Assembly (NCBI RefSeq): GCF_006345805.1
Contig: NC_043024.1
Span: 16,244,001 to 16,308,000 of the forward strand
Direction of reading: 5' to 3'
Source: Octopus sinensis
Taxonomy: Eukaryota
DNA length: 64,000 nt
The translations under genes were made by a program, and so were the position numbers. The notes below the pieces were generated by a model. That model made no database searches, had not been told where the DNA came from, and worked only from the letters and a program-made list of their open reading frames with translations. Below are positions 2,582 to 63,603 of the stretch, one piece after another (position 1 is the first letter of the stretch; each line of letters opens with the position of its first letter).

Positions 2582-2810
2582 GGAGCATATGGCATAGTGG
2601 TTAAGAGCACAGGCTACAAACCCCAAGATTCCGAGTTCGACTCCAGGCAGGGACCTGAATAATAATAATAACATTGAAAAATACCTTAGGAATGAGAACC
2701 CAGGATCGAAATTTCCCCAAGACACCTAAAGAAGGCTGGAGGGTATATCAGCCGAAAAGTTGTATTAACAAGATGAGGACAAATATCCGTCAACTGTAAA
2801 TAATATCCTT
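2582..2810 (+). mobile_element. tRNA-headed SINE-like element with hammerhead-like tail
   Basis: A box TGGCATAGTGG 2590-2600, B box GAGTTCGACTCC 2633-2644, (AAT)n linker, then hammerhead-shaped motif 2721-2766. Confidence 0.6.
2721..2766 (+). ncRNA. Degenerate minimal hammerhead motif (H2)
   Basis: GACAC-CUAAAGA-A-GGCUG(10 nt)CAGCC-GAA-AAGU-U-GUAUU; stem II perfect, core G5 and palindrome C changed. Confidence 0.45.
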
Positions 2811-2839
2811 ATATATATTTTTATAGTTTATATATCAAA

Positions 2840-3000
2840 ATCATCATCATCATTTAACATCCACCTTCCATGCTTGCGTGGGTGGGAGAGTTTCACTAGA
2901 GTCAGGCAGGCAGATGCCTGCATCAGATTTCTGTGACTGTTTTGGAAGGATTTTTACAGCTGGATGCCCTTCCTAACACCAACCACTCAGCTGAATGGAC
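2840..3000 (-). mobile_element. RTE LINE 3' tail fragment
   Basis: Reverse complement of the 3' end of the RTE at 30800-30998, with (GAT)n tail. Confidence 0.7.
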
Positions 3001-3122
3001 TTTTATATTTATGGTAAGTGGCTCTTACAGGACTTGTTCTGTTGCATTCTTGGAGAATTCATGAGAGAGTAGAATAGATGTTTCTGCAAGTAGATCAAGA
3101 TTGAACAGTCAATGGCCATTAA

Positions 3123-3343
3123 CCCTTCTGTTACCATGTTTCTGTTGAGATGCTTTGTGTTTCTTTCAGTTAAATTTAAATATAACAGAGTATTTAGTAA
3201 AATTACTTAGTTATCATTATGTTAGTGTTATGAACACAATTGTGACTAAGGTTTGGTGGAAGATTTTAATTCAGAACTTTTGAAAACAAGACGTTTGTAC
3301 TACAGAACCAGAGGCTGTTTCAGCTGGGTTGGTATCAAAAGGG
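3123..3343 (-). mobile_element. piggyBac-type MITE family 1, full length
   Basis: TTAA (3119-3122) CCCTT...AAGGG TTAA (3344-3347). Confidence 0.8.
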
Positions 3344-3374
3344 TTAAGAATTGTTTCTCTATTATATATTTTAA

Positions 3375-3496
3375 CCCTTTTGTTAGCATATTTCTGTTAA
3401 GATGCTCTGTGTTTCTTTGAATTAATTTTAAATATACCAAAGAATTTAGTAAAATAGCTTAGTTATCATTAAGTTAGTGTTAGGAACATAAATTGT
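3375..3496 (-). mobile_element. piggyBac-type MITE family 1, partial second copy
   Basis: TTAA CCCTTTT start; matches the 3' half of the family. Confidence 0.7.
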
Positions 3497-59054: not shown

Positions 59055-59465
59055 ATCATCGTAGTTTAATATCCGCTTTCCATGGTGGCATGGGTTGGAC
59101 GGTTTGACTGAAGACTGGTGAGCCAGAAAGCTGCACCAGGCTCCAATCCGATCTGGCAAAATTTCTACAGCTGGATGCCCTTCCCAATGCCAACCACTCT
59201 GAGAATATAGTGGGTGATTTTTATGTGCCACCAGCACAAGGGCCAGTCAGGCGGTAGTGGCATCGACTATGCTTGAATGGTGCTTTTTATGTGCTACCAG
59301 CACGAGAGCTAGTCATGTAGCACTGGCAGCGATTAAGCTCGAATGGTGCTTTTTATGTGCCCACCAGTATGGGACCAGTCATGCAGCACAGGCATTGACC
59401 ATGCTTGAATTGTGCTTTTTACATGCCACTGGCATGGGAGCCAATTAAGTGGTACTGTCATTGGC
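59055..59465 (-). mobile_element. RTE LINE 3' UTR fragment
   Basis: Tail plus repeated GAATGGTGCTTTTTATGTGC units. Confidence 0.8.
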
Positions 59466-62400
59466 CAGAAGAAACAGTAACTTATCCTTATAGTACTTGG
59501 AGTTTTGAATGTCAGAGCAAAGAGCTACGATGCATTCTGGTCAGCTATTAATGGCAAGAGACGCTATGAAAAACTGTTGAAAAAAAGGGAAGTTACTCTA
59601 ATAGGTAGAAAAATAAAAAATAAAAAAGATAAAAAATACATGCAACCATATTCTCACAATACATAGACATAAACCTCCTGTGTTCATAATATCTACACAT
59701 GTACACACTCACACGAACATGTATATGTACATGCACATACGCACACAAACATATATGTATCTGCATACTCATACATACACACATATCTGCACACACATGC
59801 ACACATGCATATATATATGTGTGTGTATGTGTACGCAACATCATCCTCGGCCTTCAATTTCTGGTCTCACTGATCTTGCAAGCTTTTCTCTTGTCGGTGA
59901 TCTATTGTCATAGAAAAGCAAGAAAAAAGGTGAGATGGCCATAGCTGGAAAAGCTTTGAATATATGAATAGTTTGCTTAATCAGGATTACATGATACTAA
60001 ACAATAACCACAAAACCCACGATTGTAAGCACTAATAACTATTATAACTAACTTTACAAGCTCTTGTAGTCCCAATGCTAAGTAATGGGCATTAATAGTA
60101 ACTGTTACCTTCTCCTCAAAACTAACTAGTTTACTTTCTAATACTAACTAAAACAACCACCAATATTAATTAATGTAACTACTGGCAAGATGGCGAGCAG
60201 GCAGAAACAGCACACTTGGTGGAATACTTAGCAGTATTTTGTCTGTCTTTATGTTCTGAGTTCAAATTCTACCAAGAATGGAGTAGGAGAAAGAGTAGTA
60301 TAAGTGAAGGGAGAGGAGAAAAAAATAGTAGTTCAGTGAAGGAGAAATAGTGAGAGTAATAGTCCTGAATGAGAGTGAGTGTGAGAAAGTAATAGCAATG
60401 AGAGAAAGGAAGGGGTGATAGATGAATAAGGAAGAAGGGGTGAAAAAAGTTAGCGTTTCATCTCTGTGTGAGCATATGTGTGTATATGTAAAAGGAAGAT
60501 ATGTGAATGTTTGTGTGTGTGAGTGCAATGGAAATGGGATGTTGAATATTCAATGCTGAAAAGAAAAATCAAACAGCGTTTCAACTGTGTATGTGTATGT
60601 GTGTGCGTGTACAAGGGAAGTATATGAATGTTTGTATGTGTGAGTATTATGTATCTTATTTTCTACCTTCTTTATATATAAAATACTACAATTAGCTATT
60701 ATTTTTGATGGTTCAAGGTCAGCTAGTACTATTATAAATACCAATATTAATACACACACTAGTAACTACCATAACCACTAAACTATCTTAACTATTAAAA
60801 GATAGTTAAGTTAGTGTTAACATTTGACGTAGGGAGTATTAAAAACTCGTTATTTGCACTGTGTGTATGGTCAGATCTAAAATGATGATTAGCATAATTT
60901 ATTCTTGATATGTTTTAGCAAATTTGAATATGAATATGTTAATCATTGTTGTGTACGTCACAGAAGAAATTTCCCGTTTACAACTACAATGTGTTCGTAA
61001 CACTCAGTTCTTTTGGTGCAAAGGATTCTGTGATCGTTATTTGCACTGTGAATTAAAAAGTTGATGAGAAATAATAATGTAGTGAGAAAGATAATTAAGT
61101 TAGTATTAACAAAGTTTTGGAAACTTGGCCAAAAAGAAAATTCACATTTATAACTTTGCTTATTACAATGATTAAATAAAAGACGAGTGTTTTCTAGTTT
61201 TAGTTAGATTCTGAGATAATCGAATTGAATACTTAATCAATCAAACAAACAAACCATACAAAAACAGAGGCAGTTATTATTTTTTTTTTGTATGGATGAA
61301 TATATTGGATAAAAAATGTGTGTAGTTTGAGGGAAAATGGTTGCAGTGTAAAAATTTAGCATTCAGTATCCATCCTTTGTTTCAAGGGAAAATTTGATAT
61401 TTTATTAAGTGCAAGACAATATATATTTCTTTGTGTTGTTTAGTACAAATCACTACAGAAATAAATAAAATAAATCTTAGGTCAGAAATATGTGGGATGC
61501 CTCACATGTATACACTAGAGATTCTCTTTGTGTTTCTTTTAATAGCTGCACAAATTTCTTATCAGTAATCTATCTTTGCCATTATACTGCTCTATTTATT
61601 TGATTGCAAACACAGCTTTGTTTCAGGTGAAAAGAAATCAATGTTTTCTACATGTTGAGATAAATAAATATTTATTCAATAAATATAAAGTTCTACAGAA
61701 ATAATGATGGTAAAAATTGAAAATTAGAGAATAAGTGCAAAATATAAATCCTTCCTATCTCTCTGGAGATTGTAAGTGTTGGGTGGGGTGTAATTTCCAT
61801 GGAAATTTTCTTCATAGTTTAATAATGGAAGGCAAGGTTTATGATATAAGAAGCATATCCTTCCATCATTCTTCTTGTTCTTTATGTAGTTCAGGCTTCC
61901 GGCAGGTGAAGAGAAAAGATTTCAAGTGCAACTGGTTTATTTACAGGAAAGGTGAAGTGTGCTGCTCTCAGCTACCATCTTAAGCTCCGATAGTGTGGGT
62001 GCATTGCCTCTGGAGATAAACAGGCAGAAAGCCTCAGCGAGTGGTGGTGTTAAGCCAGTGCTGCAGTGAGGTGGTGCTGAAGAAGAGACAAGTCGGAATC
62101 GGTTTTCTGTCTTTATCGTTTCTGTGCTGCTACAATAGGAAGTAGATAAGTTAAGTTAATTTTTTGGCTCAAAAAGCAAAAAGCAAGGCCATGTAGGGGG
62201 GCATGGAGTTATGTACAGGGTGATGTTCATGCAAAGAGTTCAGGCCATTTGTGGTCAAGGGAGACTTTGAACCGAGCGGTGATAGATAAACCTCATTAAA
62301 CTGGCTCAAAAATTTCCCTCACTCTTATAAACACTCTTCATATATTTGTCCCCTTTTCACAATTCCCTGAACTTCTCCAATCATAAATAGCTTTTTCATT

Positions 62401-62940
62401 ATTGCCTGTCACAACTTTCACTGGAACATCATATATCTCAAATTGTGATTTAAATTTGTTTATGATTGGCCGTTTCCTATAATCAATGAGTCCACTGTTC
62501 TAATTCACAAAAATGAGAGACTGGACATTCTTGTATTAAAACAAATCTGCTGCAGTTGTTGACTGTTATAACTCTGGCACTTATTTGAGTGGCGCTTCAG
62601 TTTTGTCAGTTTCTTTGGCGCTAGAAACAATTTTCTCATTTGTTAACCAGTTCAGTGATGTCTTCAGACATCCCAGGCCATTACAAAAGTTTGCTTTCTA
62701 TCTTTGGACATAATGTTTATGTTTATCACCTCATTGCCTTTGGAACACTAGAACAATGGTGAGAAGCTTGTTTCCCAACCACATGGTTCTGGGTTCAGTC
62801 CTGCTGTGTGGCAATTTGAGCAAGTGTCTTCTACTATAGCCTCAAACCAACCAAAGCCTTGTGAGTGGATTAGGTAGGCGTTAAATGAAAGAAGCCCATC
62901 GTATATATATATATATATATGTATATATATATATATATAT

Positions 62941-63128
62941 AGGGAGAGTTTACGAAAAAACAATAGATGAAGACAGGTGGTGTACAAAACAAACAGATGT
63001 ATTAGTATAATGCTCAGGAATAGAAAAAGTCTTATACGTTTCGAGCCTACGCTCTTTGACAGAAAATGACACAGAAAAAACAAGGAGAGAAAAAAATGTG
63101 TGTAGTAACTAACGATCTATCATGCCGA
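62941..63128 (-). mobile_element. H1 family element, copy 4
   Basis: Hammerhead 63030-63067 with core CUGUCAA (G8 lost); 3' end abuts (TA)n. Confidence 0.75.
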
Positions 63129-63227
63129 CTAGTGCCGGACAGAAGGGTCAAACACAAGGAGGAAAGTAGGGGAGATAACAAGGGGAGATAACATATATAT
63201 ATATATGTATATACATATATATATATA

Positions 63228-63603
63228 TATAAACAACTTATAAAAAAGGGCAAACGAAAAAATTTCTAATGCCAAATATGCCGAAATTAGACACCTTGTC
63301 CATAACCATATAATTTTTCACAATACGCACGCTACTCAAAAAAGGTCGACAGAAATTTCTAAAAAAATTCCATTATTACCATATCGGACCGATTTCAGGG
63401 TTAGTTCATAAGAACCCTCCCTTCATCAGTGATAATTGTGGCAAAGAAATAAATGAGATACTTACTCATACCCATGGAATTTTATATGATTGTTTATGAT
63501 TGGCCGTTTCATAAAAATTATATGGTTATGGACAATGTGTCTAATTTTGGCATATTTGGCATTAGAAATTTTTTCATTTGCCCTTATTTATAAGTTGTTT
63601 ATA
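63228..63603. mobile_element. Element with 91 bp inverted ends and an internal hammerhead
   Basis: Arms 63228-63318 and 63513-63603; left end in (TA)n. Confidence 0.8.
63375..63436 (-). ncRNA. Type I hammerhead fold, canonical core (H5)
   Basis: AUUAUCA-CUGAUGA-AGGG(18 nt)CCCU-GAA-AUCGGUCCGAU-A-UGGUAAU. Confidence 0.75.

What the first reader, a model, noticed from the sequence alone, without database searches (positions are those of the whole stretch)
2721..63436. About seven hammerhead-bearing element families, each with its own self-complementary stem III: a possible dimerisation address code
Seen: at least ten hammerhead-shaped motifs share one type I layout (stem I arm, core, stem II, GAA, palindrome, H17, stem I arm). 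The palindromes differ by family: ACGU (H1; H2 after one inferred back-mutation), ACCGGU (H6), ACAGCUGU (H3), AAUAUU (H4), AUCGG-U-CCGAU (H5), AUUAAU (H7). Established: Penelope-like elements carry minimal hammerheads whose palindromic stem III is too short to fold alone and which cleave as dimers. A Penelope GIY-YIG fossil lies at 37875-38260. Inference: family-specific palindromes would restrict activation to RNAs with the same palindrome, so co-resident families would be insulated while H1 and H2 could cross-activate. The class of ribozyme is known. I cannot tell whether these families or this orthogonality have been described.
Basis: partly seen in the sequence, partly recalled or inferred. 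Interest (0 to 1): 0.9.

Follow-up and report, generated by a model that had tools for sequence, protein, structure and literature searches.

The report
Penelope-type hammerhead ribozyme families in microsatellites
This window holds about eleven copies of six real families of short Penelope-like retroelement fragments, each carrying a minimal hammerhead ribozyme motif with a self-complementary stem III; this is a known kind of element, and the proposed "dimerisation address code" is untested and partly contradicted, because one palindrome is shared by several families.

Summary
The observation largely holds. A descriptor finds 5 loci in the window against 0.175 expected by chance.

Genome copy numbers (exact anchors):
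- H1/H2, one family (ACGU): 16,343
- H3 (ACAGCUGU): 20,094
- H4 (AAUAUU): 7,489
- H6 (ACCGGU): 86
- H5 (AUCGGUCCGAU): 42
- HX, new (ACCAAUGGU): 31

H7 is unique in the genome, has G17 and no stem I. I treat it as chance.

The elements sit in or beside (TA)n microsatellites and form tandem and inverted arrays. H1 is the 3' end of an element whose ORF has a GIY-YIG endonuclease domain. That makes these Penelope-like-element (PLE) hammerheads, a described class.

Only H5, H6, HX and one H3 copy have the canonical core: H1 carries U6 family-wide and H4 carries G3/C8, the classic compensatory swap. And ACAGCUGU is shared by several unrelated element bodies, while the H1 and H4 palindromes are too weak to dimerise in trans.

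Different palindromes are best explained by descent. An address code is possible only for the longer palindromes, and nothing here tests it.

The parts
7131..7168 (+). Sequence: UCUUU CUGUCGA A GAGC-GUAG-GCUC AAA ACGU A AAAGA. It has U6 and a G12A change. It lies in a 5'-truncated PLE 3' fragment at about 7067-7272.
8899..8936 (+). H1 family motif. Sequence: UCUUU CUGUUGA A GAGC-GUAG-GCUC GAA ACGU U AAAGA (U6). The element at about 8825-9037 is flanked by (TA)n on both sides.
50972..51007 (-). H1 family motif with core CUGUGGA and C as the unpaired base after A9. The element spans about 50880-51071 and ends in (TA)n.
63031..63066 (-). H1 family motif, decayed: core CUGUCAA, and stem I broken. 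The element spans about 62945-63128.
48823..48954 (-). H3 hammerhead with a canonical core and a stem II domain of about 97 nt. Sequence: AAAAUCU CUGACGA AGCC...GGCU GAA ACAGCUGU A AGAUAUUUU. It belongs to the 'B-type' ACAGCUGU family.
49984..50001 (-). GAA-ACAGCUGU-U fragment inside an element of about 200 nt that lies between two microsatellites. No 5' catalytic strand was found within about 195 nt upstream. Status open.
31102..31151 (-). H4 motif. Sequence: UUUGUCA GUGAACA G GUCGC-GGAUUUUA-GCGAC GAA AAUAUU U UGACAAA. The core has G3 and C8, a swap of the C3-G8 tertiary pair. The element spans about 31030-31405 and abuts (TA)n.
63375..63436 (-). H5 canonical hammerhead. Sequence: AUUAUCA CUGAUGA AGGG-A-GGUUC-UUAU-GAACU-AA-CCCU GAA AUCGGUCCGAU A UGGUAAU. 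The element spans about 63233-63500 and ends in (TA)n.
8347..8419 (-). H6 canonical hammerhead. Sequence: AUGU(U)GG CUGAUGA AGAU..AAAUAUAUGU-GGGCAG-ACAUAUUUU..AUCU GAA ACCGGU C CCACAU.
8154..8705 (.). Inverted pair of H6 elements: 209-nt arms at 8154-8362 and 8497-8705, 97% complementary, lying between two (TA)n tracts. The + arm is a copy truncated inside the ribozyme and starts at GAAACCGGU (8497).
51159..51214 (-). Sequence: GAGAAA CUGAAGA G AUGUCUAG-UUCAUG-CUAGACAU GAA ACCAAUGGGU U UUUUUC. The family consensus for stem III is ACCAAUGGU.
5161..5192 (-). H7, rejected as a chance resemblance. It has a perfect CUGAUGA and GAA-AUUAAU, but G at position 17, no stem I, and no second copy in the genome.
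37875..38260 (-). Possible decayed GIY-YIG endonuclease fragment, with the motif FVGMT...H and several stop codons. Support is weak.

Best explanation
The window is a hotspot of 5'-truncated and non-autonomous Penelope-like retroelement (PLE) copies. It lies in a 2.72-Gb animal genome whose size and scaffold pattern fit an octopus (inference only).

**What the elements are.** They insert into (TA)n microsatellites, often next to or head-to-head with earlier copies. Near its 3' end each family carries a PLE-type minimal type I hammerhead:
- a 4-7 bp helix I;
- the CUGANGA strand, usually followed by one unpaired base;
- helix II;
- GAA;
- a loop-less, self-complementary helix III;
- then H17.

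**How the ribozyme is thought to work.** Helix III cannot close on its own. By the established double-hammerhead model, the ribozyme is active when two copies pair through that palindrome. This happens most readily between neighbouring copies in one multimeric transcript, and it releases unit-length RNA.

**Why the palindromes differ.** Each family inherited its palindrome from its own master copy. Self-complementarity is the conserved property. Being different from other families is a by-product of descent, not a demonstrated code.

**Core variants.** Two of the three commonest motifs have variant cores: U6 in H1, and the G3-C8 swap in H4. Full catalytic strength was therefore evidently not required for amplification.

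**Shown here:** family membership, layout, context, covariation and the endonuclease ORF. **Inferred from the literature:** dimer cleavage and its role in the element's life cycle.
For: **Not chance.** The descriptor finds 5 loci against 0.175 expected. Anchored motifs have thousands of genome copies and the reversed-pattern control gives none or few.

**PLE link.**
- Window H1 copies align to the last ~215 nt of longer copies.
- In those longer copies, an ORF on the same strand about 550 nt upstream matches GIY-YIG in L009, L025 and L032, and also in L029 (E about 1e-3 each).
- That ORF has 64 relatives at E<=1e-5, and two of them pass Pfam's GIY-YIG cut-off.

**PLE habits.**
- (TA)n flanks.
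- Divergent inverted pairs in the H4, H5, H6 and HX families.
- Tandem arrays every 412-426 nt for H6, and 431 nt for the family that Rfam model RF00163 detects elsewhere in the genome.
- These match published descriptions (PMC8557442, PMC4209133).

**PLE-hammerhead hallmarks** (PMC4209133): an unpaired base after A9, a G10.1-C11.1 pair (H1, H4), and a palindromic helix III.

**Hammerhead-like constraint.**
- In H1 every core position is 93-97% conserved except N7 (T10/A9/C7/G4) and H17 (A21/T9, never G).
- H6 stem II covaries: G-C in 51 copies, A-U in 21.
- In H5, 94.6% of cells pair in the named fold, against 14-46% when the partners are slid.

**Dimer model.**
- No helix III folds alone.
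- Cofolding pairs the palindromes between the two molecules for the type-A ACAGCUGU hammerhead (H3A), H5 and HX.
- The C3G/G8C double mutant partly restores cleavage in a PLE hammerhead, and cleavage is not needed for insertion in vitro (PMC11167929).
Against: - No Rfam hammerhead model scores any window motif.
- No cleavage, RNA-end or expression data were available.
- H1 (U6) and H4 (G3/C8) fail the canonical core. The canonical A6 form of H1 exists in only 56 copies.
- Many H3 type-A copies have CCGAUGA, i.e. U4C.
- The PLE link is shown directly only for H1. For H3-H6 and HX it rests on layout and on insertion context.
- The Pfam GIY-YIG hits on this genome's own ORFs are below the curated cut-off.
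- H4 shows no N7 or H17 variation, so it rests on layout alone. A pseudo-hammerhead arising by chance in one of a genome's many repeat families is not excluded.
Confidence: 0.8

Rival explanations
1. Address code. Helix III palindromes have been selected to differ, so that a ribozyme is activated only by RNAs of its own family, which insulates co-resident families from one another.
For: - Six families carry six different palindromes, and each is conserved within its family.
- Predicted homoduplexes are stronger than any heteroduplex: H5 -13.9, H3 -11.1, H6 -8.3 and HX -8.2 kcal/mol, against at most -5.8.
- Palindromes of unequal length cannot form a flush helix III.
- I found no paper that discusses this idea.
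Against: - ACAGCUGU (20,094 copies) is shared by several unrelated element bodies.
- The H1 and H4 palindromes give only -1.7 and -0.2 kcal/mol.
- Tandem arrays allow dimerisation within one transcript.
- Any two diverged palindromes are orthogonal by default, so difference alone is not evidence of selection.
- Hammerhead cleavage is dispensable for PLE insertion in vitro (PMC11167929).
Confidence: 0.1
2. Dead relics. The motifs, at least in H1 and H4, are no longer ribozymes. They look conserved only because the copies are recent descendants of one master, and the fold may serve another purpose (for example protein recognition) or none.
For: - U6 is present in about 99.5% of H1 copies: only 56 canonical copies against 16,343.
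- H4 is uniformly G3/C8, with no canonical relatives.
- Other PLE clades thrive without canonical hammerheads (PMC8557442).
- Cleavage mutants still insert in vitro (PMC11167929).
- A natural C6 variant had only low activity (PMC3088659).
Against: - H1 subfamilies differ at exactly the two positions a hammerhead leaves free (N7 and H17, never G17) and keep all the others.
- G3/C8 is the one double change known to retain partial activity (PMC11167929).
- Canonical families H5, H6, HX and H3A coexist in the genome and show compensatory changes.
Confidence: 0.3
3. Chance. The motifs are accidental matches to a loose pattern in AT-rich, repeat-rich DNA.
For: - Motifs with three or more defects occur at the shuffled rate: 6, 10 and 10 observed against 3.2, 9.9 and 11.4 expected.
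- H7 is unique in the genome and defective.
- The H3 fragment at 49984-50001 has no core.
Against: - 5 loci against 0.175 expected with the family-aware descriptor.
- Every other motif belongs to a family of 31 to more than 20,000 copies with zero or few control hits, and the whole layout is conserved in each.
Confidence: 0.02

Closest known systems
Minimal hammerheads of Penelope-like elements (Cervera & de la Pena 2014, PMC4209133; Lunse, Weinberg & Breaker 2017, not held in the library, cited from PMC6765202)
   Same: - Type I layout with a short helix I.
- An unpaired base between A9 and 10.1.
- A palindromic helix III with no loop, implying dimer-dependent activity.
- Location near the 3' end or pLTR of an element with a GIY-YIG ORF.
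- Many consensus families per genome, most copies dispersed and single, and opposite-strand pairs 100-700 bp apart.
   Different: - The host (apparently a cephalopod) was not found in that literature.
- Two of the three commonest motifs carry cores outside the published descriptors (U6; G3/C8).
- Helix III is longer (6-11 nt) in several families.
- Stem II reaches about 97 nt in one family.
U3-A8 covariant hammerheads of Schistosoma Cercyon PLEs (PMC4209133), and the engineered C3G/G8C double mutant (Martick & Scott 2006, and PMC11167929)
   Same: H4 replaces the C3-G8 tertiary pair with another Watson-Crick pair and keeps the rest of the core. This is the same logic as the natural U3-A8 variant, and it is identical to the double mutant that partly restores cleavage.
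   Different: G3-C8 is seen here as the fixed state of a natural family of at least 7,489 copies. I found no report of that. Its activity is untested.
Metazoan non-LTR retrozymes (Cervera & de la Pena 2020, PMC7229834; Li et al. 2026 preprint, 10.64898/2026.07.22.740005)
   Same: These are short non-autonomous units with one type I hammerhead each, arranged in tandem arrays and related to PLE pLTRs. H6 arrays with a 412-426 nt period and the 431-nt array of the RF00163-detected family (L006/L007) fit this.
   Different: - Most copies here are solitary and 5'-truncated.
- No tandem array lies in the window.
- Circular RNAs could not be checked.
Double hammerheads of avocado sunblotch viroid and newt satellite 2 (Forster et al. 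1988, cited in PMC4209133)
   Same: An unstable helix III is rescued when two copies pair with each other.
   Different: Those examples have a 1-2 bp stem capped by a loop. Several families here have a fully self-complementary 4-11 nt segment with no loop.

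Membership tests
Hammerhead ribozyme (type I) | Conserved core: C3 U4 G5 A6 N7 G8 A9, G12 A13 A14, A15.1-U16.1, and H17 (not G). | tested here: inconclusive
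   - Met by H5, H6, HX and H3 at 48.9 kb.
- Not met by H1 (U6, family-wide), H4 (G3 and C8, family-wide) or H7 (G17).
Hammerhead ribozyme (type I) | Three helices around the core, supported by covariation. | tested here: met
   - H6 stem II pair: G-C 51, A-U 21, G-U 2, mismatch 1.
- H5: 94.6% of cells paired, one U-A to C-G compensatory pair, slid controls 14-46%.
- Across the ACAGCUGU families, stems I and II differ completely while the core is kept.
Hammerhead ribozyme (type I) | Score at or above the Rfam gathering threshold (RF00163 and related models). | tested here: not met
   There are no window hits at gathering score, none among the 150 best matches listed at E<=10, and none at E<=10 in the H5 region searched alone. 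RF00163 does find 7 sites elsewhere in this genome. Minimal, loop-less helix III variants are known to escape such models.
Hammerhead ribozyme (type I) | Site-specific self-cleavage after H17. | not testable with these tools
   No biochemical or RNA-end data were available.
PLE minimal hammerhead (Cervera & de la Pena 2014) | An unpaired nucleotide between A9 and 10.1, and a G10.1-C11.1 pair. | tested here: met
   Clear in H1 (A, then GAGC/GCUC) and H4 (G, then GUCGC/GCGAC). In H5, H6, HX and the type-A ACAGCUGU hammerhead (H3A), the base after A9 can instead pair as A-U or A.N, followed by G-C. That reading is ambiguous.
PLE minimal hammerhead (Cervera & de la Pena 2014) | Palindromic 15.2-16.2 / loop 3; helix III unable to fold as a monomer. 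| tested here: met
   All six family helix III sequences are self-complementary, allowing a central U.U in H5 and A.A in HX. RNAfold gives 0.0 kcal/mol for each alone, and homoduplexes range from -0.2 to -13.9 kcal/mol.
Penelope-like element | An ORF with reverse transcriptase plus GIY-YIG endonuclease, with the hammerhead in the flanking pLTR or 3' region. | tested here: inconclusive
   - GIY-YIG ORFs lie upstream of H1 on the same strand in L009, L025 and L032 (E about 1e-3, below the Pfam cut-off).
- Relatives of that ORF pass the cut-off.
- The reverse transcriptase part was not verified, because the loci are only 3 kb long.
- Not shown for H3-H6 or HX.
Penelope-like element | Insertion bias for microsatellites; partial tandem and inverted 5'-truncated arrangements. 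| tested here: met
   - (TA)n flanks around H1, H4, H5 and H6.
- Inverted pairs with variable junctions in H4, H5, H6 and HX.
- Tandem arrays.
Non-LTR retrozyme | Tandem repeats of about 170-450 nt, each with one hammerhead, expressed as circular RNA. | tested here: inconclusive
   Arrays exist for H6 on C8, C9 and C19 and for the family that RF00163 detects (L006/L007, 431 nt). None lies in the window. Circular RNA is not testable here.

The most novel reading that the evidence does not exclude
Helix III palindromes define dimerisation compatibility groups. Families with private, strong palindromes (H5, H6, HX) would be insulated. The more than 20,000 ACAGCUGU elements, which have several different bodies, would form one cross-activating pool; for example, non-autonomous elements could borrow partners from it. 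In addition, the U6 (H1) and G3-C8 (H4) cores would be catalytically competent natural variants kept by selection in successful PLE lineages.
Probability: 0.12. Interest if true: 0.75.

Novelty: new variant of a known kind. Interest (0 to 1): 0.45.

Why it matters
PLE hammerheads are among the most abundant ribozyme motifs in animal genomes, yet their role is unsettled: cleavage is weak in vitro and is not needed for insertion.

This genome offers a natural experiment with more than 40,000 anchored motif copies.
- The largest groups carry either a shared 8-nt palindrome, a U6 core, or the G3-C8 swap. Until now that swap was known to me only as an engineered rescue mutant.
- If the variant cores cleave, the accepted hammerhead consensus and the search descriptors built on it are too narrow.
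- If they do not cleave, two of the three commonest motifs amplified without a working ribozyme. That would support the view that the motif is dispensable or serves another purpose.
- The shared-versus-private palindromes also make the dimer model directly testable by mixing experiments.

Tried and rejected
- **Rfam scans of the window**. No hammerhead hit appeared. The many mir-297 and mir-466 'hits' are TG/TA microsatellites.
- **Strict and slightly relaxed descriptors**. These find only H5. I first concluded that most motifs were chance, and the family searches overturned that.
- **Loose descriptor**. Motifs with three or more defects occur at the null frequency, so single-copy scoring cannot decide. 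Family evidence is needed.
- **Whole-genome DNA (BLAST-type) search with the H1 element**. It returned nothing because very common words are skipped, so I switched to exact-pattern searches.
- **Locus allowance.** Later families were judged from the matched strings only.
- **G3/C8 to C3/G8 covariation within H4.** I looked for it with a 3'-anchored search and found none. The family is uniformly G3/C8.
- **H7.** No second copy within 2 mismatches of a 24-mer. Rejected.
- **H3 site at 49984-50001.** No CUGANGA within about 195 nt upstream. Left open.
- **The two ACAGCUGU sites in the window.** They are not copies of each other.
- **RNAalifold on H5**. It predicted a non-hammerhead consensus fold, so I counted the named structure instead.
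- **A regex parse of H5** failed.
- **Pfam on the window's GIY-YIG 'fossil'.** No hit.
- **Lunse et al. 2017.** The paper could not be read.
- **Neighbouring families.** I considered that an H1 copy always sits just downstream of another family on the same strand, as it does for the three H1 copies at 8.9, 51.0 and 63.0 kb. That is not general: only 1 of 30 independent H5 loci (L067) and 1 of 29 independent HX loci (L095; L097 is the window's own copy) have an H1 copy nearby, and in both it lies on the opposite strand. None of the 30 H1 loci has another family nearby.

Full report
**Setting.** The window is G000:C28:16244001-16308000 of a 2.72-Gb eukaryotic assembly. It is 37% G+C and full of TA and TG microsatellites. 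Hits fall on 30 large scaffolds plus many small ones, and a 2.72-Gb chromosome-level assembly is reported for Octopus sinensis (PMC12564688). That fits an octopus, but it is inference only.

**Is the observation more than chance?**
- Rfam finds no hammerhead at gathering score and none among the 150 best matches listed at E<=10. It finds none at E<=10 when only the best motif's region is searched.
- A strict type I descriptor finds one motif, H5 at 63375-63436 (-).
- Loosely matching motifs occur at the shuffled frequency.
- I was therefore ready to dismiss most of the list. Family evidence reversed that.
- A descriptor that allows the features known for Penelope-like-element (PLE) hammerheads and the variant cores seen in the families finds 5 loci, against 0.175 expected.

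**Family by family**

*H1 and H2 (ACGU).*
- The window has four copies: 7131-7168 (+), 8899-8936 (+), 50972-51007 (-) and 63031-63066 (-).
It belongs to the same family as H1.
- The 19-mer covering stem II, GAA and ACGU occurs 16,343 times in the genome, and the reversed control occurs 0 times.
- In 30 fetched copies the upstream strand is CUUU CUGU-N-GA A. Every position is 93-97% conserved except N7 (T10/A9/C7/G4). H17 is A in 21 copies and T in 9, and never G.
- That is the variation pattern a hammerhead allows, but position 6 is U rather than A.
- The canonical A6 form exists in only 56 copies, about 20 of which form a recognisable subgroup.

*H3 (ACAGCUGU).*
- GAA-ACAGCUGU-H occurs 20,094 times, against 307 for the control.
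- The 100 sampled sites fall into several unrelated bodies.
- Type A is a textbook minimal hammerhead: GUCU C[U/C]GAUGA A GGGAUAU..AUAUCC[C/U] N GAA ACAGCUGU A AGAC. It has 1,837 anchored copies, and many have CCGAUGA.
- Type B has a stem II domain of about 97 nt. The window copy at 48823-48954 (-) is of this type and has a canonical CUGACGA core, AGCC/GGCU closing stem II and AUCU/AGAU as stem I.
- Further types exist.
- The second window site (49984-50001) has no recognisable core.

*H4 (AAUAUU).*
- The window copy is at 31102-31151 (-).
- The 5' anchor occurs 7,489 times and the 3' anchor 3,565 times, with 0 control hits.
- The layout is complete: stem I of 7 bp, an unpaired base after A9, G10.1-C11.1, GAA, the palindrome, then U17.
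- The core, however, is GUGAACA. Positions 3 and 8, which form the C3-G8 tertiary pair, are swapped to G3-C8. No C3/G8 relatives were seen.
- The C3G/G8C double mutant partly restores cleavage in a PLE hammerhead (PMC11167929). A natural U3-A8 covariant is known in Schistosoma PLEs (PMC4209133).

*H5 (AUCGGUCCGAU).*
- It has a canonical core and 42 anchored copies.
- In the named fold 94.6% of cells pair, and one pair shows a U-A to C-G compensatory change.

*H6 (ACCGGU).*
- The window copy is at 8347-8419 (-). It first looked like an accident at the edge of a 209-nt inverted repeat.
- But 86 genome copies carry the same hammerhead, with CUGAUGA in 75 of 81.
- There are two subfamilies with a compensatory pair: G-C in 51 copies, A-U in 21, G-U in 2 and a mismatch in 1.
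- The window's + arm is a copy truncated inside the ribozyme.

*HX (ACCAAUGGU).*
- The window copy is at 51159-51214 (-).
- It has a canonical core and 31 anchored copies.

*H7 (AUUAAU).*
- The site is 5161-5192 (-). It has G17, no stem I and no other copy in the genome. It is a chance resemblance.

**What the elements are**
- All real families sit in or beside (TA)n tracts.
- H4, H5, H6 and HX often occur as divergent inverted pairs with variable junctions. H6 forms tandem arrays every 412-426 nt.
- The window's H1 copies align to the last ~215 nt of longer copies. In those longer copies an ORF on the same strand, about 550 nt upstream, matches the GIY-YIG domain. That ORF has 64 relatives at E<=1e-5, two of which pass Pfam's GIY-YIG cut-off.
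- Microsatellite targeting, pseudo-LTRs, tandem and inverted insertions and a hammerhead near the 3' end are the published hallmarks of endonuclease-bearing PLEs (PMC8557442, PMC4209133).
- The anchored motifs sum to roughly 44,000 genome copies. That predicts about one per 64 kb, whereas this window has ten exact-anchor matches, so it is a local hotspot.

**Mechanism**
- No helix III folds on its own.
- Cofolding two copies pairs the palindromes between the molecules for the type-A ACAGCUGU hammerhead (H3A), H5 and HX.
- This fits the established double-hammerhead model (PMC4209133, PMC6765202). It remains a prediction here.

**The address code**

In its favour:
- Palindromes are conserved within families.
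- Homoduplexes (-6 to -14 kcal/mol for the longer palindromes) beat all heteroduplexes, which reach at most -5.8.

Against it:
- ACAGCUGU is shared by several bodies whose stems I and II differ entirely. That is a common code, not a private one.
- The H1 and H4 palindromes give only -1.7 and -0.2 kcal/mol.
- Tandem arrays make dimerisation within one transcript sufficient.
- Diverged palindromes are orthogonal by default.
- Cleavage is not needed for insertion in vitro (PMC11167929).

I found no paper that discusses helix III orthogonality. The idea is open and testable for H3, H5, H6 and HX. It is not supported as a general rule.

**Verdict**
- This is a known kind of element in a host where I found no prior description of it.
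- Two family-wide core variants, U6 and G3-C8, are worth a specialist's attention.
- The address-code reading is at best partly right.

Noticed in passing
window 10151, 21008 (+); 13267, 44093, 46801, 55856, 57982 (-): An abundant SINE-like repeat whose head reads GGCGAGCTGGCAGAAACGTTAGCACGCCGGGCGAA. It contains GAA-ACGT by coincidence, with no hammerhead core upstream. At least 7 copies lie in the window.
   Followed up: partly
window 28565-29599 (+) and 29497-30237 (+): A reverse-transcriptase ORF (Pfam RVT_1, E=1.8e-32) followed by a Cys-rich, PHD-like stretch. This is another retroelement, and it was not shown to be a PLE.
   Followed up: partly
genome: 56 sites listed: About 20 of the 56 H1 copies with the canonical A6 core share distinctive flanks (TGTTTATTT..CTGATGAA..AAAGACTTTCTCAC). 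They may be an older, canonical subfamily from which the U6 lineages expanded.
   Followed up: partly
genome: 1,837 type-A ACAGCUGU hammerheads: The commonest type-A subfamily has CCGAUGA (C at position 4) and other subfamilies have CUGAUGA. Because CCG is a CpG site, C-to-T decay of individual copies would create the canonical core.
   Followed up: no
G000:C8:50156432-50157373, C9:35724764-35725694, C19:11960791-11961310: Tandem arrays of the H6 unit with a 412-426 nt period, which is a retrozyme-like organisation. L006/L007 (C16) show a 431-nt tandem of a further canonical family with helix III ACAUGUGU.
   Followed up: partly
whole window: There are ten exact-anchor hammerhead-family matches in 64 kb, where genome-wide counts predict about one. 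The window is a local hotspot, probably because it is rich in (TA)n targets.
   Followed up: partly
window 41600-43350, 1000-1200, 4030-4400 and others: Dozens of sub-threshold Rfam 'mir-297/mir-466/mir-3149' matches are TG/TA microsatellite hairpins, not microRNA genes.
   Followed up: yes
window 30900-31010 (-), 2840-2890 (+), 49520-49785: A second abundant short repeat (..ATCATCATCGTCGTTTAACGTCCGTTCTCCATGCTAGCATGGGTTGGACGG..) abuts the H4 element. At 49520-49785 it forms a 53-nt inverted pair.
   Followed up: no
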